DNA from: Vitrella brassicaformis CCMP3155
Taxonomy: Eukaryota; Protista; Chromerida
Reading direction: 5' to 3'
Assembly: GCA_001179505.1 (NCBI GenBank)
Contig: CDMY01000384.1
Coordinates: 26,468-90,467 of the forward strand
Length of the DNA stretch: 64,000 nucleotides
Under the pieces are notes generated by a model that saw nothing but the letters and a program-made list of their open reading frames with translations, had not been told where the DNA came from and did not search any database. Of the stretch, positions 26,768-47,299 are shown piece by piece; positions within the stretch are counted from its first letter, which is position 1, and each line of letters starts with the position of its first letter. The position numbers and the translations under genes were made by a program.

Positions 26768-29700
26768 GTGTGCTTGCAGGCCCGTCCGCGTCTGAGGCGC
26801 AGTGCTTCGAGCACTTGGGTGTGCTTGACGTCGCATCCCAGGCCTGCTGTGCGTCCACATGCGGGGTGTGCCACACAGACGATAGTCAGCAGTGCAGTGA
26901 CCGCTGGGGCGGAGCCGAGAGCTGCTGTGCCAATAGGATCGTGGAGACCAGGACATTCTGCAGCCATGCCAAGGCGGCGCCGTGCATCGGTGGTAGCCTA
27001 GGCGCGGTGCGGGGCGCAGATCCATTTCGCACATCCGTCATCGTCTCAATGCGTGTGTGGTTCAGATGCATCCTTGAGTCTCGGCGAGTTATCCCTGATC
27101 CGGCCGACAGTCACCACCGAGACGGCCACTACCGCCCCCTCTGCCCTCATACCCCTCAACGCCACCACTCAGCCACAAGCACAGCCATTCGATCTCACGT
27201 CCCTCATTGCTGACCTATCGACCACCACCGCCCAGCAGCCTGCAGGCCCCCTTCTCGCGGTCACTCAATCCTCAGCGGCTGATTTCAACTTCCACGTAAC
27301 CATCAACGGCCTCCCGCGGCAGCATGACGGCTTGGTCGGCGTCAAATTCGATGTGCACCGGGTGGAAAAGGGCAAGAAGGAAAATGCCGCAGCGCTGTTC
27401 CTGACACGCGAGCAGAGAGAGCCTCCGTATGCTCTGTGCTCGTCGAGTGACGGGAGGGAGCGGCTGGTTTATCGGGGGTGTGGGTGGCCTGCGGGTCAGT
27501 ACCGTGTGACGGCCCAGATGATGTCCCAGGGCAAGCCTCTCAAGTCGCCTGTGGAGGTCACTGTCAAGACAAAGGGTGAGAAGTGGGATGGATACACGAG
27601 ACAGGGTGACTGCATGTCGATCTGTGTGCTCTGTGCATCCCTTTGAAGGTCCGTCTGCAGCGGCCAATGCGGTGGGCATGGACGGCGTCTCAACCTCCGC
27701 CGATTTCTCAACCTTCCTGTGCTCGCGCATCCGCGGCCACATGAGCGACGACAAGGACTATGCGACCAGCTGCTGCCCCGCATTCTGCTCAACCTGCGGC
27801 GCGTCACAATGCGCGAAAAGCGGCAGCGAGAAGCAGCGCCCATCGCCCCTCGACTGGGCCCGCCTGCCGTCCGTCCCCCCACACGCATTCGCCAACACCA
27901 CCACACTGCTCACATATCTGAAAAGAGACCAAGAGGGAGGTGGTGTGGTGGATGGTGTGGTGGATGGGCAGCATCGCGATTCGCTGGTTGCGAGGCGTGC
28001 AAAAGGTATGGAGGCGGTTGATCGTGCTGAGGCGCTGGCAAGGCTGGAGAGGGAGGTGCGGGAGCGGCTGTGCTGCGCGTCGTTCGTGGCTGAGCATTTC
28101 GGGTCCTGTTGGGAGGGGGCCTCGCCGCACCCCCCATGTTTGGCGGACGAGCCAGAAGCCAAAACCTTCGCAAACAGCCAGGGTGAGCATTCCGACTCGT
28201 TGTCCTTCACGCTTGTCTGGACCTCTGTGCCTGGCCGTCCTTCAGTGGCTGTCAGCCCGTTGCTGACTTCCATTAGCTTCATCGATCCCATCCCCCCCGG
28301 CGCTGCCAAGCCCTCCACAGCCACGGCAAGCAACGTGCCTCTCTACCTGCCGAACGAAGCAGCGTTCAATGACCAACCAGCAGATGCGTACGAGCTGATC
28401 CCGCCCCTCGCACCCCGCATCCACGGCACACCGAGACACCTGCCCGTCGCTTTCGCCACGCCCCAGCTCAAGAGCCCTTTCAATCTGCAGATCGGCCTCC
28501 ACCCCGCCATTGACGAAGACACCTCCCACATCGGGTTCCACGTCATGGTCCGCCGCGGCAAGGAGGTGGTGTCGCAGCTCTGGGACTTCCGCGCCCCTTT
28601 CACGCTCTGTGAAGACATTGTGAGTGACGGCCAGGATATTGTCAAGGAGTTCTGCGGTTTCGAAGGTCGGCCTGGCAACTACACGATCGTTGCGCAGGCC
28701 TTCTGGCTGCAGGGGAGGGAGGGGGAGGGGAAGGGTGTGAAAGAGGAAACAGAGAGGGCGAGGCGGCTGCAGGGTCAGGACGACGCGCAGCTCGCAGCAT
28801 GGCACGGGGCCACTGAGAAAGAGGTGTCCGCCACATTCAATCGTAGACCGATCGGACCACCCATCACCATGAGCATCGACGTCCCCGGTGAGTCAGGCCT
28901 GCTAACGTCCGTCCAACCAACCCTGTCGGTCGAGTGACCTCCTTGTCTCTGTGTGCGTCTCTGTGTCTCAGAGAAGTCCCCCGCCGTGGAAGAGTGCTTC
29001 CGCTCACACGGCATCCTGCAGCCTTCCCCCACACCACACTCCCCTTCTCTGGCCTGCTGCCCAGCCGAGTGTGGCCGGTGCGACAACGACGATGGCGAGT
29101 GTGCCGTCCGCGGCAGGGCCCTCTTCCTCGACCCACGTGCGTGCTGCCCCAATGAGATCCTCAAGGCGGCTGTCGGCATGAAGACCTACAAGAGTGACAG
29201 TGACGGCGAGACACGAATGCCAATAGGCGAGCCGTCGCCTCGGTGCGCGCTGCAGGGTGCAGCGCCGTGTGTGGCGGCCACGAGCGGGTTGAGTGTTGCG
29301 CTGCGGCGAGACATCTGCGAGAGCGCCCTCAATGGGAACTTTAACGCTTTGCACAACACATGCTGCTCGGGGTCATGCGGCACATGTGCGGCAGACTCAA
29401 TCTGCCACCTGCGACAGGGCGGGGCCGATGGCTGCTGCCCCCTCACCATCACAGACCAGCAGCAGTTGCCGTGCTCAGCCAAGGGAGCGGCGCCATGCCT
29501 TGTCGACGATGGGCCCTACCATTTCCCGTCCGCTGAGGTCCGCAGATGGGCATTTCGTCCGTCAGAACAACCAAGACGGTCCGCTCACGGCTGCAGCGTC
29601 GACACGCCAAGCCGGTGTGTGATCTACCAGGTGGTCACTGACCGCTTTGCGCTCTCGCCAGGCAGTGAATCGGACGATGTGTGTGCCGGGGAGGTGGAGA

Positions 29701-32190
29701 GCGAGTGTCAGGCCATGGCTGGCGGGGTCGGTGAGGTGGGTCATGGGTATAGGGGTCGGTACTGTGGCGGCAGCTTCAAGGGCATGGCGGCGAAGGTGGC
29801 CTACCTCCGAGACCTGCACGTCACGTCGCTGTGGATGTCCCCACTAATGCAGAACACCAAATGCACTTTCGACGGTAGGTATCCACTCACAGCGCACAGA
29901 TGTGTCCATCTCGCTGGTCAGGTCATGCTGTGTCTTTCTCTCTCTGTGTGTGTGTGTGTCATGCAGGGTCCGCCCCGAGCAACTGGGAGCGCATCAACAG
30001 CCACTTCGGTACGTCAGCTGACCTGCAGTCGCTCGTCACGGCCGCCCACAGCCAGCACATCGGCCTGATACCCGAGGTGGTCGTCAACCACGTCGGCAGG
30101 GCGGGGCCGCACTGGGGCGACGTCGTGTCGTCCCAGCGGCCCGCATACGCCACCATTTACCCCTTCAACGCCACCCACTTCTACCGCCCCTTCGCAAAGT
30201 GCCACCCTGCCAGCGAGGTGGCCAGCACCTCCAAGCTCACATCACGCGAGCGCATCAGACGGCTGGAGCAGTGCTGGCTCAATAGCTACCCCGACCTCGA
30301 TACGACCGACCCATTCGTGGAGGAGTATCTCTCACAGTGGGCTCTTGACGTGGTGCTGCGGTACCAGTTCGACGGCGTTGCTGTGAGGGACATCGGACAT
30401 GTCGACACGGCTTTCTGGGAGCGGTTCCTGCGGCACTTGTCCACCCCAACAGAGCGGGGGGCGAGGAAAATGTGGGCGATCGGCGAAGGCATGACCTTTC
30501 CCGATGAAGCGCTTGGCTCGAGGGCGTTGCAGCTGCAGCACCTGGCGGCTTACCAACACCGGCAGCAGGCCAGCATGTTTGATGGCGTGCTCAACTACCC
30601 CCTGACATGGGCGCTGCGAGAGGCCTTCGCGCCCGATGTGGTGAGACGCAAGTCGATGCACGGGGTGGCCGAGACCTTCGCCCTCATGAAGCAGCTCTAC
30701 AGCGCTCCAGGTCGAGCGGTGAACTTCCTGGAGAGTGTGGACATGCCCCGGTTTCTGCACGGAACGCTCCCATGGGACATGGGGCGGAACGAGGCGCCAA
30801 GCCGGGACACGCTGTCGATGGACGCACCGTCTGTGCGGCAGTACCAGAATGCACTCACCATTGTGGGGGCTGCGGAGGGGGTCCCCATGTTCATCTACGG
30901 CACAGAACAGATCAAAATGGCTGACAAAGGTGCGTTGGCAAGGGGGGAAACACATTGACGGATAAATGTACGTGTGTGTGTGTGTGTGTAGATGAGCGTG
31001 CGCCACTCTGGCTGAGTGCGTATGACACGGCAGAGGGGTCGCTCTACGGCTTCCTGAAGACCCTCAGTGCCCTCCGCGTCAACGGGCATCTCGACGGGCC
31101 GCAGAGAGAGCTCCTGGTGACGGAGACAGGGAGGGAGGGGAAAGACCGCCCCAGCCCACCCACCCACCCAACCACATGTGTGTGTCGTGTGTCTTGTCTC
31201 AGGTGGAAGATGACGTATACGCCTTCAGCCGGGGCGACGGCGGCAGTGCCGGCACAGGCACATACGCCATCGTCGTCGCCACCAACATGGGCGTCGGCAA
31301 ACACACGACCATCAAGATCCCCAAACGCGCCCTGCCCTCCTCGCTTGTCGACACTGATGCGGCAGAGCAGGGTCTGTGTGAGGCACTGATTCCTTTGGGC
31401 AACGCGGCTCACTGCTTTGGGCTGAGTGTGCGGTTGGAGGGCAAGGAGAAGTGTGTCGTGCCTAAGGGAGAGGGGGACGCTGCGCAGGTGGAGGAGATAT
31501 ATGACCCTGACACTTGCCTGGTCAGCAAGCCCACACACACACACACACGACATATAGCCACCCACCGCTTGTGTGTTCCGTCTCTGTGCCACGCACAGGC
31601 GCAGGAGGGCTGCTGCTGGGTGCCCATGTCCGGCCAGCCGTCGTGCTTCAAAGCCAGAGAGGGAAACGGAGACAAAGGTGCCCTCACAGCACAGGCCCTG
31701 TCAGCGCCGTCACCGTCGAGTGACTGCCCGACGGACGCTCTGTTCGAGGAGAGGTGGCCGTGTGGCTCAATCCGCGACCAACACGCTTGCAGGGTAAGTG
31801 GGCACACAGACCATGTGAATGAGCACCGGCTGGGTAATCATCTGAGTGCGTGTCTGTCTCATGCAGGCTCAAGGGTGCTGCTGGGACCCCCAGCCCGACT
31901 CGTTAACGAGCCCGCCATGCTTCACCACATCACCCCATTCTCCCCCCAGCCCCCACACACACGCATCAACGTCGGCGTCGTCTCTCCAGGCCGACACCAC
32001 CCAGTCGCCCCCGCCGCCGCCGCAGCAGCTGACCACAAGTGACTGCTACCCTGTGTCTGCCCCTGGGGGCGAGGAGGGCGATGGTTATGTGCACATTCCC
32101 ATCCGTGGTGGGATGCCCCGGGTGCTGCTGCCCAGACACACGTACACGCCGTCAGCGGCAGTGCAGGTCCATGGCATCAGCGATGAATGA
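24317..32190 (+). CDS. Giant secreted modular protein: signal peptide, acidic/Thr-rich stalk, 4 beta-rich modules alternating with 5 Cys-rich modules, a GH13 alpha-amylase-like domain with degenerate catalytic motifs, 2 trefoil-like domains
   Basis: Leu-rich leader. GH13 motifs: IYQVVTDRFA, GGSFKGMAAKVAYLRDLHVTSLWMSP, HFGT, EVVVNH, PDLDT, FDGVAVRDIGH, IGE, FLESVD, GVPMFIYGTEQ. Trefoil-like CPTDALFEERWPCGSIRDQHACR|AQGCCWDP..PPCF. The introns checked join the exons in frame. Confidence 0.75.
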
Positions 32191-33750: not shown

Positions 33751-36700
33751 TCAGGGGTGGCTAAGTGTCGACCCCTGCCGAGTGAGCTGCCTGGCCATTT
33801 GGTTCTTGAGGCTCAGCTGCACCGTCTGCACACTCACGGCGTGGCTGGTCAGGGGCGTATAAGGCATGAGCACCGACGAGGTGCTCCCCTGCGGCCGCAT
33901 CCGGTGGGTCGGGAAGAGGATGGGCTTGGCGGGTATGCCGCCGAACCGCTCGCCGCGCTCGAACTCCTCCCCCTTCATCATCAACGACATGGGGGCCAGG
34001 TAGGAGCCGTCAGCCTTCATTGGACGGTAAGGAGATCCAGGCACATGGGTGCGTCGGGATGGAGGGAAAAGGTGTGTGTGTGTGAGTGATTGTGTGTGTA
34101 TACCATGTTGGTTGTGTAGAGGACGACGGCGCGTGTGCCGACTGTGCACCTGCGGCCTATGGTGATGGTGCCCATCTTCATGATGCGGTCCTCAAACAGG
34201 TGGCCTGCACAACACACCAACAGACACACACACACGACACACACATGCACTCCCAAATCCCAAATGCGATTTCCCCTCCCTCCCTCTCTCCCTCTCTCCC
34301 CTGTCAGCTCAGCTCACCCTGCACAGTGACATCGTCGTTGATGCAGGCGTCATCGCCAATCGCCACCAAGTCAGGCTCGGTCAGGTGAGGCGTCGCCATG
34401 TACACCCTGCTGCCAATCCGCGCACCCAGCAAATGGAACCACATGGGCAGCAGGGGAGTGCCGATCAGCACCCGGATGAAGCTGTTGAAGGCCAGGTCTT
34501 CCTCCAGCGCATTGGAGAGCTCGGCGCGCCAGACGAACGACGACCAGAGGGGCGCCTGCTGCTCGCCGTACCTGCCCACCAGCAGCCACTTGCCGGCGAT
34601 GGCGACTATGGCGTTGACGGAGCCGTACAGCCAGAACATGGCCGGCATGAGGAAGAGGCCCCACCAGCCGAGATCGGTCAGAGTGATGGTCCCCACATAC
34701 CTGACACACACACACACACAGGGAGAGAGAGAGAGATTCAAACACACCTCTCCCTGTCTGTCCGGTTCTAGTGGATACCTACCATGCAAGCAGAAACGAG
34801 TAGACCGACACGATCCCCGGCAGTATGGTCCTCAGCGCCTCAATCGACCCCCGTATAGGGTACAGGTGCACAGGGGGGTTGAAGGTGCGGCTGTCCCCGC
34901 TGTCCTTGACCACGGCACGGTTGGCGAGCGGGAAGGGCAGCGACCCCAGCCACGACGTCCCATCCTTGGCCTCGTCCGCACCGGGGGCAAGGGACATCAC
35001 CCCCAGCAGCGTCTCCTTGCCGAAGCGGCTGCCCCCCGGCACACAGGCGTTGTTCCCGAGGAATGTCCTCTCCTCACACATCACCTTGCTGATGCAGAAG
35101 TTGCGCTTGGCGTCGACGGTCCAGCCCCCCAGGCCGACGAAGTCTGCCACGAAGCAGTCGTCACCGATGTGCAGCATATCGGGGGTCCAGTGGCGGGCGT
35201 CGGAGATCTCCACACGGCGCCCGAGCTTGGCGCCAAGAAGGTTGAAGTAGGTCCGGGTGAACATGGTGGAGTAGAACTGAGTGAGGCGGAGGAGGCCCAG
35301 AGAGAAGCACATGGATGGTATGGTATAGGTGTGTGGGGGGGGAGCTGACCTGGTGGGCGAATGTGAGAGTGATCTGTTGAGCCCAGTGGTTGACCCACCA
35401 CCTCAGGTAGAGCCACCCGTACAGCGGGTAGGCGCCCTCCTTGATGCGCTGCACCGTCACCCACTTGAGCACCACCGTGAACAGCAGGTACCACAGCAGC
35501 CCGCCCACCACCAGCACCGGCGCCCACGCAGCTCCCACAGAGAACCCCTCATTGGTCGACACACGCACGGCCTCGGTCGTTGCCCAGAGCCAGGCCATCA
35601 GGGGCACCCCAAGGGCGAGGAAGATCACGTAGTAGCCGAGGAGCACGCCAAAGCAGAACATGGCGAGGGTGGCGGCGCCCACACGTCTGTGCTCGACCCT
35701 GTCGTCCTCGACGTCGATGGCGATGGTGAGGTGCCGCTTTGGCGTGCGGACGTTGGCAGCATTGCTGTCGTCGTGGGTCTTCTTGACGGATGACTTGGTG
35801 GGGATGGCCACTCTGTTGGAACCCCTTGCAGGTGCTCCCTCCCAGTGTGCTGATGCGGGGACTTTTTGGCCAGAATGGAGGACGGCGAGGTTGCCGATGG
35901 AGCCGCCGTCGCCAATCTCCGTGTTGAGGTTCACGCCACTGGGGGGCAGCAACGCAGAGAGAGGGGTGGTGGTGGTGTGTGTGCGTGCGTGTGTGGGGCT
36001 GTGGTCTCACCTTCGCTGTCCGAGCACAGCGCCTCGGCCTAGTTTCACCGTTCCAAGCCTCAGCTTCCCGTCCTCGACCTCCCAGCATGACACCCGAGCA
36101 CCCACATTGATCACCTGCACACCCACACCCACACAGAGGTGAGTGGTTGTCCATGTAGAATGCGGCCATCCATCCCCTTCCTCTCTCTCTGCTCACCACA
36201 TCGTCATCGAGTGTCAGGAGGTCATAGCCCGACACGAGCGTGGAGGCGATGTGCACGTTGCGGCCGACCTTGACGCCATACAGCCGCAGCACCCACGACA
36301 GCACTGGGGTGCCCGAGAACATGGCCAGGGGGGCGCCCCAGGTCTCGACGATCCACCACCTCAGGAAGTACCAGCCCCACCTACTCATTCATTCACAGAC
36401 AACACAAGACATGTCAAAGAACCGCTCCTTCCCTCTCTCTCCCTCTCTCTCTCTCGTCTGTCTCTCTTCCTTACAGAGGGTGTTCTCCGGGCACCACTTT
36501 GCCGAGGACGATCCACTTGACGGCGACGGACACCAGCACCCACACGGCCCATGACACGATCGTCCACGCGGGGAATGTGAAGATGACGTATGTGACGGAG
36601 TACTGGTCCAAAGTCTCCTCGATCGCCCACAGCCCGGCCGCCACCCACAGCGCCGCGAAGGCCGACAGGAAGAGCAGGAACACACCCTGCAGGAACCACA

Positions 36701-38612
36701 CCGTCCAGCGCGTCAGAGCCGGGGCCTGATAGCACAAGACAACACAGCCACACATGTCCATGAGGACAAAGGTCCATCACACACCACCACACTCATCTCG
36801 TTCCTACCCCGCCTGATTCGGTTTGTGTCTGCAATCTTGACTTGATCGACTTAAGACCCGTCGCAAATCGTGTCGCCAGGCGGCCCAGCGGCGTCTGTGG
36901 TGGTGTGTGGGTGAACACACGCGCCCGGGGCAGCCGCAAAGGCACCCCCTCGGCCCTGCATGTGTCGGTGATGTTGGTGGCGAGCTTGCGGACTGTCCGG
37001 GCGTCGTAGAGGTCGCGGACGGCCGTGGGAACCATCCGGATCTTCTTGCGCAGGGCGGAGATGAACTGACGATCGACACACGAGGGACTGTGCATGTGGT
37101 CGTGTGATGCGGTGTGGTGTGGTGTGGTTGTGCGAGAGTGGGTAGGTGCCCGGGCAGGTACCTACCTGTGCGGCGCTGAGCGAGTTGCCTCCCAGTTGGA
37201 AGAAGTCGTCTTCGGCGCCGACCCTCTCCACATTCAACACCTGCACTCACACACAGAGAGAAATCCCCGCACCCCTACACATCACACCCTCTCACAACAC
37301 TCTCGCTCCCTCCCTCCCTCCCTCCCTCTCACGTCCGAGAACAGCTCAGCGAGCGTCGTTTCCAGGACTCCCTCAGGCTCAAGGTACTCGTTCCCCGGCC
37401 CCCCACCGGCACCACTGCCCGGTGCGGTCTCGCTGCCCGGCGTGGGCATCTTCTCGAGCGCCTTCCTGTCCACCTTGCCAGTGGGTGAGATGGGAATGGC
37501 GTCGAGCAGGACGTACCGGGCGGGCACCATGTAGTCGGGCAAGATGGAGGCCGCGTGGGCGCGGAGGGCGTCGGGGGTGAGGGTGGAGGGATCTGTGTCG
37601 GGTGAGTCCTCCTTCTTGGGCTCGAGGTATGCGACCAGCCTGTGTGCATGGCATGGTGGGAGGGAGGGGGAGTGCTGGGGTCTTGTGGTTGTGCATTTGT
37701 GTGTGTGTGTGAGCGTTCGGTTACGTTTTGGCGCCGCCTTTGCCGATGTCCTGTCGCACGATGACGCACACGTTGGCGACGGGCGGGTGGCGGCCGAGGG
37801 CTGACTCGATCTCCGACAGCTCCACACGGAAGCCCCGGATCTTGACCTGTGTTTGCGAAGGACAACAAGCAAGAACACACACACATGCGCAGTGCAGTAG
37901 ACTCAGAGTGGCCTGTGCCACCCACCTGTGAGTCGATGCGTCCCAGGAACTCAATGTCGTGGTTGGGTGACCACTGCACCAAGTCACCTGTCCGATACAA
38001 CCTGCACCCATTCACACACACACACACACACACGTACTCATGGGTGCGATTCGCTTGCGCTGAAGACACCCGTCCACCTCCCTACCCTACCCCACCCACC
38101 GTGGGACATATCCAAAGGGCCCCTCCTCCCTCCTGATCAGCTCCGGCCGCACCCGGCCCGAATACGTCGGGCTCACCGCCACCTTGCTCATCACGTCCGT
38201 GTTGACACTCATGCCATCCACCTCAACCCAGGTCTCCTCAGCCTCGGCTCGCGGCGTCTCCGGCGCGCGTGTGGTGATGTCGTCGTTGCTGTTGCCCTTG
38301 CTGCTGGCCTTGCCAATGTTGCCGGCCAGCTGCAGCCAGTTGGGCATCGGGGGACTGTACTTGTCAGGTATGAATTTCTCAGGGTTGAGGTCGGGGCGGT
38401 TGATGTAGCCACGGGCGACGGACATGCCGCCGATGAGCAGCTCGCCTGGTTTGCCCGGTGGGCAGAGGGCGCCCTGCTCGTCGACGATGTAGCACGAGTA
38501 GCCTGGGAGGGGCTTGCCGATCGTGACGGGCTTGCCAGACGTGAGCGTGTCGTAGGTGGCCACCACCGTAGCCTCTGTCGGACCTGACACAGAAAATGGA
38601 CGTGTTTGTGGC

Positions 38613-38643
<31 letters not shown>

Positions 38644-40065
38644 TTATGTGTGTGCCCCTACCGTATGTGTTGAGCAACTGTCTGCCTGGTGCATCCCACT
38701 TGTCCACGACCTCTGGAGGGCACGCCTCGCCGCCGGTGATGACGATCCGAAGCAGAGGAGGCGCCGGGATATCCTCAACCAAACGCAGCACCTGCACACA
38801 CACACACACACACACGCACACAGAGCCGTGAGACAACGGACTGATGGGTGTGTGGATGATCGCAGGGTGGCGTACCGTGGGCACAGTGGAGAAGACAGTG
38901 ATGCCCTTCTTGGCCAGCACCGCCCCCAGGGCGGGCCCCTGCCTCATGGTCTCCTTCGTGCCCACCACCAGTGTGGCTCCCGCCGCAAAGGCCAGCCAGA
39001 TCTCCTCCACACTGGCGTCAAACGACGTCGAGAAGCCTTGCAGCACCCTGAGCCAACGCCCACAAGGAAGGGTGTGTTGATGGGTCAGGCTCTCCGTGCC
39101 TGTGTGTGTGTGTGCGTGTGTGTACCTGTCTTCTGAGGTGGTGGGGAAGGACATTTGCTCGGCGAGCACGAAGTTTGAGGCGCATCGGTGCTCGATACAG
39201 ACGCCCTTGGGCCGCCCTGTGCTGCCGCTGGTGAAGATGGCGTAGCACGCGTGACGCGGCTCGACGCCCACCTCTGACGGGCTGAGCGGCAAAGCCGAGA
39301 TCATCTCAGAGTCCATCAGCGACCTGTCCACAGCCACACACAGACACACAACACATATGTGAGACCTGTGCGTGTGTGCCGAGCAGGAGGGCAGGGGGGT
39401 GTTCATCGTTCGCTTACCCCCATTTGGTGGCGGTAAGGACAATCGTGGCGCCCGGCTCGACGCCCTCAGCAGCCCAGCTTGTCAGCATCGACAGGTCGGT
39501 GACCAGATCCGGCGGCACCACACCCCCCATGGCCTCCACCACAGGCACCAGGTCGTCGCTGGTCAGCACCAGCTTGGCCTTGCCGTCCTCGAGAGTCGAC
39601 TGCACCCGCTCAGGCGGGTACTCAGGGTCGATGCTGACGTAGGCTCCTCCAGCCTTGAGTATTGACAGCATGCAGAGGTAGAAGTGGGCGCCGCGGGGGA
39701 GGAACACCCCGCACAGGTCGTCGGGGAGCACGTGGCAGCTGCGGATGATACGCGCAAGGACGTTGGCAGTCTCCTCCAGCTCCGCATAGGTCCACCGGAT
39801 GTCATCCTCTTCACACTGCACACAACACAACACAACATAACAGAGGGACAGACACAATCACCATGCAGACAGATGTCAACACACTTGTGGATCAACCTTC
39901 GTATCATTCTGTGTGCCAGCAATGTGTGTGGTGTGTGCATCGGTCGGTTCTGCGCACCTCCACCGCCACGTTGTCAGGATGAGCAGCGGCGGATCTTTCG
40001 AAGATCTCGTGCAGCAGAGGTGGCTCGCCGCTCGTCGGCAGCAGGTGAGCGACGTCTTCAGGCAT
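33751..40065 (-). CDS. Single-module membrane-bound NRPS-like enzyme of the epsilon-poly-L-lysine synthetase (Pls) family: A-T-(TM/C1)-(TM/C2)-(TM/C3), about 19 exons
   Basis: A-domain motifs: WTYAEL (A1), [12 protein letters not shown] (A2), [15 protein letters not shown] (A3), FDASVEEIW (A4), NTYG|PTE (A5), [14 protein letters not shown] (A6), LYRTGDL (A7), GRIDSQ|[14 protein letters not shown] (A8), PTGKVDRK (A10). T domain: [11 protein letters not shown]. Three repeats follow, each with hydrophobic helices, KW(I/L/V)..G/Q..PL(W/Y)..(LRWW/VWR), an LG(A/V)K(V/L/I)G hexapeptide stretch, and a final GHLFEDR. Confidence 0.9.
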
Positions 40066-42664: not shown

Positions 42665-43930
42665 TCACTTCACAGTGTCTGTGATGGGTGACGCGTCGTC
42701 ACTCTTCTCTCCTGCAGGGCTCCCCGGGGGCGTCTTGAACTCTTCTGCCGGGCAGTCTGTCTCGCCCGCAGCCACAGGGGTCTCCCCGCCCTCACCACAG
42801 CAAATGGCATCACCTCCTGTGTCTTGGTCCGAGCTGACAGCAGCCGTTGTCGAGTCGGCCGGTCCCTCTTGTACATCCTGGAAGTCGTCCTTGTCCTCGA
42901 GCGCCTCGCGAATGAACTCATCAGCCTGAATGCACGGACACACAAGTCCATTCCATACGGCTACCGTGTGTGACTTGGGTTCGGTTTCCTCCCACCCCGT
43001 GGACCCACCTCCGCGAAGTGCTCGTCATTGATCACGTTTGAGTTGGCCGCGTAAACGGTCCCCAGCACAGCCAAGTCGTCAATCAGACCTGCACACACAT
43101 ACACACGGGACCTGACCACGTTCAAGGCAAGCAGGCGCAGCAAAGCTGGCCTAGCTAGCTGCCCCGTCCGCTCACGTACCAGCCCCGAGAATGAAGTCCG
43201 GCACCAGGTCAAGTGGCGCACAGAAATAGAGCAGAGCCAGCGCCAGCATCACTCTGCAAACACAAACACACCTCGCTGACTGGTCAGCAAGTGAAATGTA
43301 TGTCGCCCACTCACTTGTTGATGGTCGATGCGTTGGCACGCAATGCATAATACATGGCCAGCGGCACACGAGCCTGAACACACACACACACATATACCAA
43401 TCCTGCGTTCCGATCCTTCCCCCTCCTCTCACCACAGTGCCGCCTGCACTTCGGATCAGCCATCGAGCCGCCGAGCCGAACTGCAGCTGCAGCGTGCTCT
43501 GCATCGCCTCCAGATCCATCTCCGGGCCTCCCGACACATCAGCCGTTGCACCAGAGGAAGAAGACGGGCTCGATGCCGAGCCATCGCCCGTCGATGACAT
43601 AAGCTTGAAGTACAGCTCACTCCACTGCGCCCGGTCGTCCATATCGATGTCCTTTATGGCGTTGGGAGGCCCCTCTCGCCCGGGGGATGAGTCATCCTTG
43701 CCCTCACTGCGGGTCGATGATGAGTTGGAGGTCTCCCCCGCCTCACCGAATCCGAAGTATGAGGCAAAGTGGTCCCATGATGAGGTGCTCTCCCGTGATG
43801 TGGATGTCTGCAGCGAGCACGCGGGGACGGTCCTGAGAGAGCCGATGCTGTCTGGGCGACTCTGAGGCGATTCGTCTTTGTTGGCAGGGCAGGAGAAGGG
43901 AAGAGCCGCGCATGATGTGGGCTCGTCCAT
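42665..43930 (-). CDS. DUF1232 (YkvA-like) domain membrane protein with Ser-rich N-terminus and acidic tail
   Basis: LALALLYFCAPLDLVPDFILGAG|LIDDLAVL matches the DUF1232 signature Y..SP.D.IPD....G..DD. Confidence 0.75.
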
Positions 43931-44105
43931 CTCACCCGGGAGGGGAGGGAGGGAGGGGAGAGCTCGCGATCGCCCTTTACCGTTGGGCTGCCGTTGAGTG
44001 GGCGGGCCGGCTCTTTCTACGGGGCTCTTTTGGTGTGCCTTGGCTGCTGTCTGCCGCAGTGAAGCGTACCAGCACAAACGACTCACAGCCCCGCGGTTGT
44101 CCGTG

Positions 44106-44747
44106 ATGGAGACCTTGCCATCGGCCGGCGGCCGCCTGGTATCCTCGCAGGAGAGCCGCAAGCACTCCCTCGCCTCCCCATCCCTCTCCATCCCTTCCTC
44201 GTCTGCCCTGGCACACAGCCTGATGCTGCTGTTCTTTATCTACGCCGGCTACGTCCAGGGTAATGACCCCGATGGCGCAATGTGGATGGCTCTCTACAGC
44301 ACTGCGGCTCTCGCGTGTGTGCTCCGGATGGCCCGGTTGGACGGGCCCGCCCGGATGCTCTCGGATGTGGGCCTCATCTCTGCCTTATCTCTTCTCGCCC
44401 TGACCTCCTACAGCGCTCCCGTGTCTTCTTGGTTCGACTTTGCCCTCGAGAGCGGCCGTGAGCAAGGCGGCTCGCTGATCATGGTGATATGGGCGGTGAC
44501 GACGACACGCGGCCTCAGCAGGGGGGAGGGGGAAGGCGTCTGCCGCAAGTGTTTCCCCGTGGCGGCGGTGCTCTTCCCATTGGCGGTGCTGGTGGCTGCG
44601 TACGCCATTCCCAAGGTCATGGTGGGTGTGGACACGCCGGACCACTGCAAGGGCCTCGGCGTGCAGTTCTACGCCCACACCGAGAGGCGGCTGCCTGTGG
44701 AGCAGCACCTGTTTGTGCCTACCACACATGCCCATGTGACCAATTAA
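44106..44747 (+). CDS. TMEM220-family membrane protein (intronless)
   Basis: AGYVQGNDPDGAMWMALY...ESGREQGGSLIMVIW...DHCK resembles the TMEM220 motifs (Q.NDPD..W..Y; E.GRE..G..I..W). Confidence 0.7.
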   Translation: METLPSAGGRLVSSQESRKHSLASPSLSIPSSSALAHSLMLLFFIYAGYVQGNDPDGAMWMALYSTAALACVLRMARLDGPARMLSDVGLISALSLLALTSYSAPVSSWFDFALESGREQGGSLIMVIWAVTTTRGLSRGEGEGVCRKCFPVAAVLFPLAVLVAAYAIPKVMVGVDTPDHCKGLGVQFYAHTERRLPVEQHLFVPTTHAHVTN

Positions 44748-46278: not shown

Positions 46279-47299
46279 CTAGCTGCTGATGTATGAGTGT
46301 GTGTCGATTTTGTCGGGCATGGGGCCGATCTTGACCTCGAACCTGGCCTGGATCTCGTTGAGCATGGCCGTGTCGGCCTCGGTGGATGTGAACGACACCG
46401 CCAGGCCCTTGGTGCCGAACCGCCCTGCCCTCCCCACCCTGTGCAGGTACTGGTTGCTGTCGTCAGGCATGTCGTAGTTGACCACGATGTTGACGCGCTC
46501 GATGTCGATGCCGCGACCTAACAACACGCACAGGGGCGGCCGGGTGTGACGTGCAGATGCAGATATGGCCACATGTGTGTCGTCCCCGGTGTCTGTGACG
46601 GTGTGTGTGGCAGCATCCTGCGCATTACCCATGAGGTCGGTCGAGACGAGGATGCGTTTCTCGAATTTCTTGAACTCGGTGTACCTCTTGATGCGCTCCT
46701 CCTGCTTCATGTCGGAGTGTATGACGGTGGAGGGGAAGTTGCACTCGGTGAGGAGCTTGTTGAGTGCCTTGGCGCGCGAGACGCTCTTGACGAAGATGAT
46801 GACCTGGTTGAACTCGAGGTTGTCGAGCAGGTCGTTGAGCTTCCTGTTCTTCTCGCTCTCGGTCAGCTGCACGTAGTACTGCAGCAGGCCGTGCAGCGTC
46901 AGCTTGCTCTCGTCGTCGATGAAGATCTCGACCGGGTTGCGCATGAACTTGCGGCAGACGTCCCGGATGTCGCCCTTGAGGGTGGCGCTGAACATCATGA
47001 CCTGCTTCTCCTGCGGGGTCGCGATGAAGATGTTCTGCACGTCCTTGCGCATGTCCAGCTTGTCCAGGCACTTGTCGCACTCGTCCAACACGAAGTACTT
47101 GAGGTGGTCCACGTTGAGGTGCTTCTCGCGAATCAGCTGGTTGATCCGCCCGGGAGTGCCGATCAGGATGTGCGGCCGCTTGCTGTCGTCCTTCAGGATG
47201 GTCTTGTGCTGCTCGATCGGCACGCCGCCATAGAACTGCACACACACAAAAACACACACACACACACGTTTGTGTCCTCACATGAATCAACACCGTACA

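What the first reader, a model, noticed from the sequence alone, without database searches (positions are those of the whole stretch)
33751..40065. Intron-containing epsilon-poly-L-lysine-synthetase (Pls)-type NRPS in a probable alveolate alga
Seen: a complete adenylation domain with core motifs A1-A8 and A10, a T domain with the phosphopantetheine Ser (LGGNSL) and no classical condensation or thioesterase domain. After these come three tandem units, each with TM helices, a KW..G..PL(W/Y) motif and hexapeptide/left-handed beta-helix-like repeats, ending in GHLFEDR. Established: this A-T-(TM-C)x3 layout defines the Pls / NRPS-terminal-domain (TIGR02353) family, which polymerises diamino acids via isopeptide bonds. 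Characterised members are from Streptomyces and other bacteria, plus the fungus Epichloe. Inference: this organism may make a cationic homopoly(amino acid) for antimicrobial defence, surface coating or N storage. I know of no description of such a pathway in chromerids or apicomplexan relatives.
Basis: partly seen in the sequence, partly recalled or inferred. Interest (0 to 1): 0.92.

Follow-up and report, generated by a model that had tools for sequence, protein, structure and literature searches.

The report
Polylysine-type synthetase gene in Vitrella
This is a real, spliced and expressed nuclear gene of the chromerid alga Vitrella brassicaformis for a membrane-bound enzyme of the kind that bacteria and some fungi use to make the antimicrobial polymer epsilon-poly-L-lysine. 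The protein is already in public databases, and a 2023 paper listed a Vitrella homologue, so the find is solid but only mildly new.

Summary
Window 33751-40065 (minus strand) holds a 19-exon gene with 18 GT-AG introns of 72-142 nt. My independently built model of 1565 aa is identical to the deposited Vitrella brassicaformis CCMP3155 protein CEM08117.1 ("unnamed protein product"). Intron-free contigs in two RNA-type runs confirm nine of the splice junctions.

The protein has one adenylation domain, one carrier domain, no condensation or thioesterase domain, and a C-terminal domain that scores 484.8 bits against TIGR02353 (Pls/PosA), above the curated cut-off of 423.1. That domain has six hydrophobic helices in three pairs and three mutually homologous beta-helix units. 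The adenylation specificity code DAESIGTVVK equals that of the characterised Streptomyces albulus poly-lysine synthetase.

The closest relatives are Piridium sociabile and two Chromera velia proteins. The four form one clade, which argues for long vertical inheritance in chrompodellids.

Novelty is limited. Patel et al. 2023 (PMC10522769) listed a Vitrella homologue under another accession, CEM14083.1, with the same Lys code. This scan has also followed up a second Pls-type locus on another piece of this genome (s1-235818).

No polymer has been shown in any alveolate. RNA coverage does not span the carrier-to-membrane junction.

The parts
33751..40065 (-). Whole coding region of the Pls/PosA-type synthetase gene: 19 exons, 18 GT..AG introns, 1565 codons plus stop
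   Evidence: The model was built and is identical to deposited CEM08117.1 / P0151. It is collinear with the Piridium transcript P0001 over residues 41-1426.
39958..40065 (-). Exon 1 (Met1-Glu36)
   Evidence: ATG at 40065 with an in-frame TAG 15 nt upstream. The donor GTGCGC is inferred. The N-terminus aligns with Piridium P0001.
39418..39815 (-). Exon 2 (A1-A2 region)
   Evidence: Boundaries inferred from homology and GT-AG sites. TIGR01733 hit.
39126..39323 (-). Exon 3 (A3 motif SGSTGRPKG)
   Evidence: The 3' junction 39125/39048 is seen in an RNA contig of X1.
38876..39047 (-). Exon 4 (A4 FDASVEE; code positions 1-4)
   Evidence: The RNA contig covers 38979-39050. The donor at 38875 is inferred.
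38662..38791 (-). Exon 5 (code positions 5-7)
   Evidence: Both in-frame introns are inferred from alignment to P0001.
38100..38583 (-). Exon 6 (A5-A6 plus a lineage-specific insert of about 85 aa, residues ~413-497)
   Evidence: An RNA contig covers 38098-38250 and joins across intron 38099-38002. The insert was mapped.
37926..38001 (-). Exon 7 (A7 YRTGD)
   Evidence: RNA junctions on both sides.
37725..37846 (-). Exon 8 (A8)
   Evidence: RNA junctions on both sides.
37333..37639 (-). Exon 9 (A9-A10, Lys618, start of the carrier domain)
   Evidence: RNA contigs cover 37396-37638. The donor at 37332 is inferred.
37166..37240 (-). Exon 10 (carrier core LGGNSL; Ser685 codon begins at 37183)
   Evidence: Inferred. 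PP-binding hit. No RNA contig covers it.
36808..37065 (-). Exon 11 (end of the carrier domain plus linker)
   Evidence: This is the weakest boundary. The donor GTAGGA at 36807 was chosen for typical intron size and linker length, with an alternative donor at 36918. The deposited model agrees.
36475..36725 (-). Exon 12 (TM1, TM2)
   Evidence: RNA junction 36474/36381.
36197..36380 (-). Exon 13 (start of unit C1)
   Evidence: RNA junctions on both sides.
36011..36114 (-). Exon 14 (C1 beta-helix)
   Evidence: RNA junctions on both sides.
35350..35938 (-). Exon 15 (end of C1, disordered linker, TM3, TM4, start of C2)
   Evidence: RNA contigs cover 35350-35451, 35501-35710 and 35662-35938, with junctions on both sides.
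34783..35276 (-). Exon 16 (C2 beta-helix, TM5)
   Evidence: RNA junction 35349/35277. The loose end of an X2 contig matches the next exon.
34318..34700 (-). Exon 17 (TM6, start of C3)
   Evidence: The acceptor is supported by the X2 loose end. The donor at 34317 is inferred.
34104..34204 (-). Exon 18 (GHLFEDR motif; His1446 codon begins at 34202)
   Evidence: Inferred. His, Leu and Arg of the motif are invariant and Phe, Glu and Asp nearly invariant (90% or more) in 47 homologues.
33751..34014 (-). Exon 19 (end of C3, C-terminal tail, stop)
   Evidence: Inferred. An X2 contig at 33565-33722 lies just past the stop and is probably the 3' UTR.
37474..40002 (-). Adenylation domain (residues 22-618, introns included)
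   Evidence: PF00501 at residues 22-395 and PF13193 at 534-618. TIGR01733 scores 385.5 bits against a cut-off of 317.4. The code is DAESIGTVVK.
36976..37356 (-). Carrier (T) domain (residues 658-720)
   Evidence: PF00550 scores 43.9 bits.
33904..36707 (-). Membrane polymerisation domain (residues 783-1515): three units of TM pair plus left-handed beta-helix
   Evidence: TIGR02353 covers residues 789-1507. Hydropathy gives six segments in three pairs. The units are mutually homologous. The AF2 model has pLDDT 90.4 and pTM 0.90.

Best explanation
The locus is a functional nuclear gene of Vitrella brassicaformis for a single-module, membrane-anchored NRPS of the Pls/PosA (cationic homo-poly-amino-acid synthetase) family. 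Shown here: the gene structure, its splicing and transcription, the domain layout, family membership by curated HMM, and a specificity code identical to that of the characterised poly-lysine synthetase. Inferred from the characterised family members: the cytosolic adenylation domain activates L-lysine as Lys-AMP and loads it on the phosphopantetheine arm at Ser685. The C-terminal domain is six helices in three hairpins carrying three beta-helix units packed as a pseudo-trimer. [quoted passage not shown] My own guess for the catalytic base is His1446 in the invariant QxHLFEDR motif of the third unit, because only the third unit keeps a His at that position. The likely role is a secreted or surface-bound polycation for antimicrobial defence, and that role is conjecture.
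For: 1. My gene model is identical to deposited CEM08117.1.
2. All 18 introns are GT-AG. Nine junctions are seen as intron-free contigs in the RNA-type runs X1 and X2 and not in the DNA run X3.
3. TIGR02353 scores 484.8 bits against a cut-off of 423.1, and TIGR01733 scores 385.5 against 317.4. AMP-binding, AMP-binding_C and PP-binding are found, with no Condensation or Thioesterase domain.
4. The code DAESIGTVVK equals the code of S. albulus Pls, which is marked experimentally Lys in Patel 2023 Suppl. Table 2. Ala at position 2 is the Lys-type residue according to the same paper.
5. PosA (8G95-98, 200 bits) and Pls (7WEW, 183 bits) are the best single-domain PDB matches to the pocket region.
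6. There are six hydrophobic segments in three pairs. The three units are homologous, with E = 5e-15, 1e-11 and 4e-22.
7. The AF2 model has pLDDT 90.4 and pTM 0.90, with three helix hairpins each followed by a beta-helix. Whole-domain matches to predicted Pls-type models reach TM 0.81-0.90. In the PDB only single beta-helix acyltransferases match. This is the same picture Patel et al. describe for PosA.
8. The Piridium orthologue is one complete transcript with the same layout, and it also passes TIGR02353.
9. The four chrompodellid proteins form one clade, with support 100.
Against: 1. No product has been detected in any alveolate.
2. RNA contigs are shallow (word depth 4-7) and do not cover exons 10-12, so continuity from the carrier domain to the membrane domain in Vitrella mRNA is not directly shown.
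3. Code-based prediction has misled in this family. The code of PosA was nearest a Lys-activating domain, yet the enzyme uses ornithine.
4. The carrier motif is GGNS rather than the usual GG(H/D)S.
5. An insert of about 85 residues sits between motifs A6 and A7.
6. No phosphopantetheinyl transferase or polymer-degrading enzyme lies nearby.
7. The role of His1446 is my inference from conservation only.
Confidence: 0.72

Rival explanations
1. It is a true Pls/PosA-family polymerase, but the product is not epsilon-poly-L-lysine. It could be another diamino-acid polymer (ornithine, beta-lysine, Dab or Dap), a different linkage, or only short oligomers.
For: The family makes at least six different polymers, and sequence alone separates them poorly. 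The code of PosA pointed to Lys, but the enzyme prefers Orn. This protein sits in a clade distant from the characterised enzymes (34-40% identity to the nearest bacterial homologues). It also carries lineage-specific inserts.
Against: The 10-residue code is identical to that of the experimentally characterised Pls, including Ala at the chain-length-determining position 2. All four chrompodellid proteins keep exactly this code.
Confidence: 0.2
2. The enzyme does not polymerise. It transfers a single activated lysine to another acceptor, such as a lipid, a sugar or a cell-surface polymer, using the beta-helix acyltransferase-like domain.
For: The C-terminal units resemble sugar and amino-acid O/N-acyltransferases of the left-handed beta-helix class. 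The polymerisation chemistry of this domain has no solved structure.
Against: Every characterised protein passing TIGR02353 is a homopolymer synthetase (Epichloe Epls, PMC7179176). The whole 700-residue domain, not just one beta-helix, is conserved end to end.
Confidence: 0.06
3. The feature is an artefact: bacterial contamination, a pseudogene, or two adjacent genes wrongly fused.
For: The nearest non-eukaryotic relatives are bacterial. RNA contigs do not bridge exons 10-12.
Against: The gene has 18 spliceosomal introns with the CA-repeat-rich style of the flanking genome. Spliced RNA contigs are present. One open frame runs across all 19 exons. Eukaryotic neighbours flank it: a GH13 amylase and a DEAD-box helicase. 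DNA-run contigs are continuous across the locus. Piridium has a full-length single-transcript orthologue.
Confidence: 0.02

Closest known systems
Epsilon-poly-L-lysine synthetase Pls of Streptomyces albulus (BAG68864.1; A domain PDB 7WEW)
   Same: Same A-T-(TM pair + unit) x3 layout without C or TE domains. It passes the same NCBIfam model TIGR02353. The Stachelhaus code DAESIGTVVK is identical. The A-domain pocket region scores 183 bits to 7WEW.
   Different: This gene is eukaryotic and nuclear, with 18 introns. The protein is about 250 residues longer. It has an insert of about 85 aa between A6 and A7, a longer T-to-TM1 linker and a disordered insert between C1 and TM3. I could not align it directly to full-length Pls, because that sequence was not retrievable with these tools. 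The product is untested.
Delta-poly-L-ornithine synthetase PosA of Acinetobacter baumannii (ATY43264.1; PDB 8G95-8G98; PMC10522769)
   Same: Same family and layout. PosA is the best single-domain PDB match to the pocket region, at 200 bits. The predicted C-terminal architecture is the same: six bent helices with three beta-helices in pseudo-threefold packing. Like posA, it is a stand-alone gene.
   Different: The code is DMEHNGTVSK in PosA and DAESIGTVVK here. Position 2 is Met in the Orn-type enzyme and Ala in the Lys type. PosA-type codes fall in a different part of the tree.
Fungal epsilon-PL synthetase Epls of Epichloe festucae (PMC7179176)
   Same: It is the only eukaryotic family member with a demonstrated product, and it sets the precedent that eukaryotes can make epsilon-PL with this enzyme type.
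   Different: Proteins with the fungal-type codes of Patel's table (DMENNGTVTK, DIESIGTVTK; their organisms were not looked up) cluster with Orn-type sequences, away from the chrompodellid clade in my tree. Epls itself was not in my sequence set.
Vitrella brassicaformis CEM14083.1, listed in Patel et al. 2023 Suppl. Table 2 as 'Alveota', code DAESIGTVVK, predicted Lys
   Same: Same species, same family and same predicted code.
   Different: The accession differs from this locus (CEM08117.1). It is probably the second Pls-type locus that the scan found on another piece of this genome (s1-235818). I could not retrieve it to measure identity.
Chrompodellid orthologues: Piridium sociabile EP00745_P012910 (P0001); Chromera velia Cvel_812 (P0295) and Cvel_1691 (P0013)
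   Same: Same layout and same code. Together they form one clade with support 100. Piridium is 56% identical over the A-T part and 50-52% over the membrane domain.
   Different: Lengths are 1462, 1729 and 2096 aa against 1565 here. None has been characterised.

Membership tests
Pls/PosA family (cationic homo-poly-amino-acid synthetases; NCBIfam TIGR02353) | The C-terminal ~700-residue 'NRPS terminal domain' matches TIGR02353 above the curated cut-off. | tested here: met
   It scores 484.8 bits against a cut-off of 423.1, over residues 789-1507 and model positions 6-695 of 695. The exon pieces also hit separately.
Pls/PosA family | A single N-terminal adenylation domain with intact core motifs. 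| tested here: met
   TIGR01733 scores 385.5 bits against a cut-off of 317.4. PF00501 and PF13193 are found. Motifs A1, A3, A5, A6, A7, A8 and A10 were located.
Pls/PosA family | One carrier domain with a phosphopantetheine-attachment Ser. | tested here: met
   PF00550 scores 43.9 bits over residues 658-720. Ser685 lies in LGGNSL. The motif has Asn where His or Asp is usual.
Pls/PosA family | No classical condensation or thioesterase domain. | tested here: met
   A Pfam scan of the full protein lists only AMP-binding, AMP-binding_C, PP-binding and a sub-threshold Hexapep.
Pls/PosA family | Six transmembrane helices in three pairs. | tested here: met
   Hydropathy segments lie at 783-812, 822-856, 1042-1078, 1087-1118, 1302-1325 and 1332-1352. 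The AF2 model has helix hairpins at model residues 2-71, 265-338 and 511-578. Both are predictions, not experiments.
Pls/PosA family | Three tandem, mutually homologous soluble units (C1-C3) of about 180 residues. | tested here: met
   Pairwise BLASTP gives E = 5e-15, 1e-11 and 4e-22. The C2 piece matches three stretches in most homologues.
Pls/PosA family | Asp at code position 1 and Glu at code position 3, conserved in all CHPA synthetases (Patel 2023). | tested here: met
   Asp245 and Glu249 are present. The rule is stated.
Epsilon-poly-L-lysine synthetases (Lys-activating subgroup) | Lys-type specificity code with Ala at position 2. | tested here: met
   DAESIGTVVK is 10 of 10 identical to the S. 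albulus Pls code.
Epsilon-poly-L-lysine synthetases (Lys-activating subgroup) | Production of epsilon-linked poly-L-lysine. | not testable with these tools
   This needs enzyme assays or MS of culture extracts.
Epsilon-poly-L-lysine synthetases (Lys-activating subgroup) | Phylogenetic grouping with characterised Pls or Epls. | tested here: inconclusive
   The characterised sequences could not be identified in my sets. This protein falls in a clade with Nematostella and long metagenomic proteins, all with Lys-like codes.

The most novel reading that the evidence does not exclude
Chrompodellids (the phototrophs Vitrella and Chromera and the parasite Piridium) have inherited vertically, since before their divergence, a eukaryote-type subfamily of poly-lysine synthetases. 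This subfamily also includes the sea anemone Nematostella and unidentified protists. These organisms would actually secrete an epsilon-poly-L-lysine-like polycation, which would be the first such polymer from an alga or alveolate and a possible factor in life on or in cnidarian hosts.
Probability: 0.4. Interest if true: 0.55.

Novelty: new member of a known kind. Interest (0 to 1): 0.3.

Why it matters
Cationic isopeptide polymers such as epsilon-poly-L-lysine are commercially used antimicrobials. Their products have been demonstrated only in bacteria and in one fungal genus. An intact, expressed, lysine-coded synthetase conserved across Vitrella, Piridium and Chromera makes it directly testable whether relatives of apicomplexan parasites make such a polymer. 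It also offers an intron-containing eukaryotic clade for comparing how the still unsolved membrane polymerisation domain works. The gene itself is not a discovery. The protein has been in GenBank as an unnamed product, and the presence of the family in Vitrella was noted in a supplementary table in 2023.

Tried and rejected
1. I searched for the second Vitrella protein, CEM14083.1. Searches with the C-terminal region of P0151 and of P0001 showed no other Vitrella protein among the best 120. The search with residues 1-700 was swamped by multi-module NRPSs whose scores sum over several A domains. The scan's sequence look-up was blank. The relation of this locus to CEM14083.1 therefore stays open.

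2. Literature searches returned nothing for the Lys code I recalled from memory (DAESIGSVCK), for accession numbers, or for poly-lysine synthetase together with Vitrella. The useful source was the PosA paper.

3. A PDB sequence search with the membrane domain found only weak hexapeptide-repeat hits. Foldseek against the PDB found only single beta-helix acyltransferases and gamma-carbonic anhydrases. No solved structure of this domain is available for comparison.

4. Alternative donor for intron 11 at 36918 (193-nt intron). I rejected it in favour of 36807 (82 nt). The shorter intron fits the 72-142 nt size range, has a GTAGGA donor like the others, gives a linker length like Piridium's, and agrees with the deposited model. 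No RNA supports either choice.

5. I rejected bacterial contamination because of the introns and the spliced RNA.

6. I looked for a biosynthetic cluster among the neighbours and found none. They are a GH13 amylase, a DUF1232 protein and a DEAD-box helicase.
Full report
**What is in the sequence**

The minus strand between 40065 and 33751 carries a chain of open reading frames. These are interrupted by short stretches rich in CA/TG repeats. Scanned separately, the ORF pieces hit amino-acid adenylation models, the carrier-domain model and, over five pieces, NCBIfam TIGR02353, the Pls/PosA terminal domain.

**Gene model**

A full-library HMMER search with one C-terminal exon piece gave 770 relatives. 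The best was a 1462-aa protein, P0001. tblastn of P0001 against the window is collinear from residue 41 to 1426.

I placed 18 introns using that guide, GT-AG sites and RNA evidence. All are GT..AG and 72-142 nt long. The result is 19 exons and 1565 codons. The ATG at 40065 has an in-frame stop 15 nt upstream.

The model proved identical, residue for residue, to a database protein found afterwards: P0151 = CEM08117.1 / A0A0G4F6S1. It is named 'unnamed protein product' or 'Carrier domain-containing protein' and comes from Vitrella brassicaformis CCMP3155. This identifies the organism and shows that the public annotation already has this model.

**Transcription and splicing**

Two runs flagged as probable RNA (X1, X2) contain contigs that skip eight introns exactly. 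After resolving alignment ambiguity, each skip resolves to GT..AG on the minus strand. A ninth junction is supported by a loose end that matches the next exon. A DNA run (X3) shows the unspliced sequence.

Depth is low, at word depth 4-7. Both the adenylation part and the membrane part are represented. No RNA contig covers exons 10-12, which encode the carrier domain, the linker and the start of TM1. Several points argue against it:
- One frame stays open across all exons.
- The deposited model agrees.
- The Piridium orthologue is a single complete Trinity transcript with the same layout.

**Domains and family membership**

On the spliced protein:

| Model | Residues | Score | Cut-off |
|---|---|---|---|
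| PF00501 (AMP-binding) | 22-395 | 261.3 bits | 29.9 |
| PF13193 (AMP-binding_C) | 534-618 | 49.8 bits | 24.5 |
| PF00550 (PP-binding) | 658-720 | 43.9 bits | 20.8 |
| TIGR01733 (adenylation domain) | 45-550 | 385.5 bits | 317.4 |
| TIGR02353 (Pls/PosA terminal domain) | 789-1507 | 484.8 bits | 423.1 |

The TIGR02353 match covers nearly the whole model. No Condensation or Thioesterase domain is found.

Hydropathy gives six strongly hydrophobic segments in three pairs. The three units, each a TM pair plus a soluble part, are homologous to one another, with E = 5e-15, 1e-11 and 4e-22.

I predicted an AlphaFold2 model of residues 780-1515 with a 47-sequence alignment. It is confident (pLDDT 90.4, pTM 0.90). 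It shows three long helix hairpins, each followed by short helices and a beta-helix. One disordered loop at residues ~1002-1031 is lineage-specific.

Foldseek finds whole-domain matches (TM 0.81-0.90) only among predicted models of other Pls-type proteins. In the PDB it finds only single left-handed beta-helix acyltransferases and gamma-carbonic anhydrases. This is the architecture Patel et al. modelled for PosA: six bent helices under three beta-helices packed with pseudo-threefold symmetry, like trimeric sugar-nucleotide acyltransferases.

**Substrate**

I read off the ten Stachelhaus positions by alignment. They are residues 245, 246, 249, 288, 310, 312, 334, 342, 343 and 618, and they give DAESIGTVVK. 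An earlier first-stage note gave the same code.

In Supplementary Table 2 of Patel et al. 2023 (PMC10522769), this is exactly the code of the experimentally characterised S. albulus Pls, marked Lys. The same paper shows three relevant points:
- Asp at position 1 and Glu at position 3 are conserved in all such synthetases.
- Position 2 sets side-chain length: Ala for Lys, Met for Orn, Phe for Dap.
- The PosA M218A variant gains Lys activity.

In the PDB, the best single-domain matches to the pocket region are the A domains of PosA (8G95-98, 200 bits) and Pls (7WEW, 183 bits), ahead of tyrocidine synthetase at 150 bits. L-lysine is therefore the best-supported substrate. One caveat is that the code of PosA itself had pointed to Lys before biochemistry showed Orn.

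**Mechanism**

The mechanism is inferred from the family. The steps are adenylation of Lys, thioesterification on Ser685, and then iterative transfer to the side-chain amine of the acceptor by the membrane domain. There is no thioesterase.

In the 47-sequence alignment, the motif QxHLFEDRxMK of unit 3 holds the densest run of invariant and nearly invariant residues. At the His position, units 1 and 2 of this protein have Trp. Beta-helix acyltransferases use a catalytic His at a subunit interface. I therefore propose His1446 as the base of a single active site in the pseudo-trimer. This is conjecture.

**Relatives and origin**

The nearest protein is from Piridium sociabile (EukProt EP00745). 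It is 56% identical over the A-T part and 50-52% over the membrane domain. Chromera velia has two homologues, Cvel_812 and Cvel_1691. All four carry DAESIGTVVK.

In a FastTree of 310 proteins and in an IQ-TREE (LG+C20+F+G4 PMSF, quick search) of 57 proteins, the four form one clade with support 100. Vitrella+Piridium is sister to the two Chromera proteins. From my own knowledge, this split matches the published placement of Piridium next to Vitrella. I did not check it against a species tree here. It argues for inheritance since their common ancestor.

That clade sits inside an 11-row clade (SH-aLRT 99). The clade also holds the Nematostella vectensis protein that Patel et al. listed, together with long (1700-1900 aa) metagenomic proteins. 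One of these, P0077, lies on a contig next to a ubiquitin gene and a 90-aa L36 gene. That context looks eukaryotic.

The next relatives, at 34-40% identity, are bacterial Pls/PosA proteins from Verrucomicrobiota, Planctomycetota, Binatia and others. The tree is unrooted. I left out truncated rows and near-duplicates (listed). A donor lineage cannot be named.

**Surroundings**

The neighbours are a GH13 alpha-amylase-like gene on the plus strand at about 29-31 kb, a DUF1232 protein and a DEAD-box helicase at about 46-47 kb. There is no phosphopantetheinyl transferase, peptidase or transporter that would make a cluster. pls and posA are likewise stand-alone genes.

**What is already known**

Patel et al. 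2023 reported that homologues occur in 'Amoebozoa, Metazoa, and Alveota'. Their table lists Vitrella brassicaformis CEM14083.1 with DAESIGTVVK and predicted Lys. That accession differs from this locus.

This scan has separately followed up a second Pls-type locus on another piece of the same genome (s1-235818), which is probably that protein. I could not retrieve it to compare. I found no paper naming CEM08117.1 and none reporting a polymer from any alveolate.

**Verdict**

The gene is a new, undescribed member, probably a paralogue, of a known family in a species where the family had already been noted. Interest is modest. It would rise if the polymer were shown.

Noticed in passing
P0095 (Nematostella), P0077 / L001:10001-15352, P0050 / L003:3632-9355, P0099, P0100, P0113, P0080: The chrompodellid proteins sit in a well-supported clade (99) with the Nematostella vectensis homologue and long metagenomic proteins. 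The P0077 contig has ubiquitin and a 90-aa ribosomal L36 gene as neighbours and no introns in the synthetase, which suggests an intron-poor eukaryote. There may be a eukaryote-enriched subfamily of Lys-coded Pls-type enzymes.
   Followed up: partly
P0154, P0172, P0325, P0381 (bacterial homologues): Some bacterial Pls/PosA homologues carry a fused 4'-phosphopantetheinyl transferase domain (PF01648). The Vitrella protein has none, and no PPTase lies within the window.
   Followed up: no
window 28953-31389 (+): A GH13 alpha-amylase-like gene lies downstream on the opposite strand. Pfam PF00128 hits two ORF pieces. An earlier first-stage note calls it a probable pseudoenzyme, which I did not check.
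   Followed up: partly
window 46279-47265 (-) and 43172-44191 (-): These are exon pieces of a DEAD-box helicase (PF00270, PF00271) and of a protein with a DUF1232 hit. They are ordinary eukaryotic neighbours.
   Followed up: no
window 37102-37128, 39819-39841 and other intron segments: Short repeat-rich intron segments (CA/TG-type) attract many unrelated RNA and DNA contigs and give false depth peaks and false long-range 'joints' in the read layout. They look like a dispersed intronic repeat of this genome.
   Followed up: no
window 38100-38355 (residues ~413-497): An insert of about 85 residues lies between adenylation motifs A6 and A7. It is transcribed (RNA contig at 38098-38250). It is partly shared with Piridium and absent from most homologues. 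Its function is unknown.
   Followed up: partly
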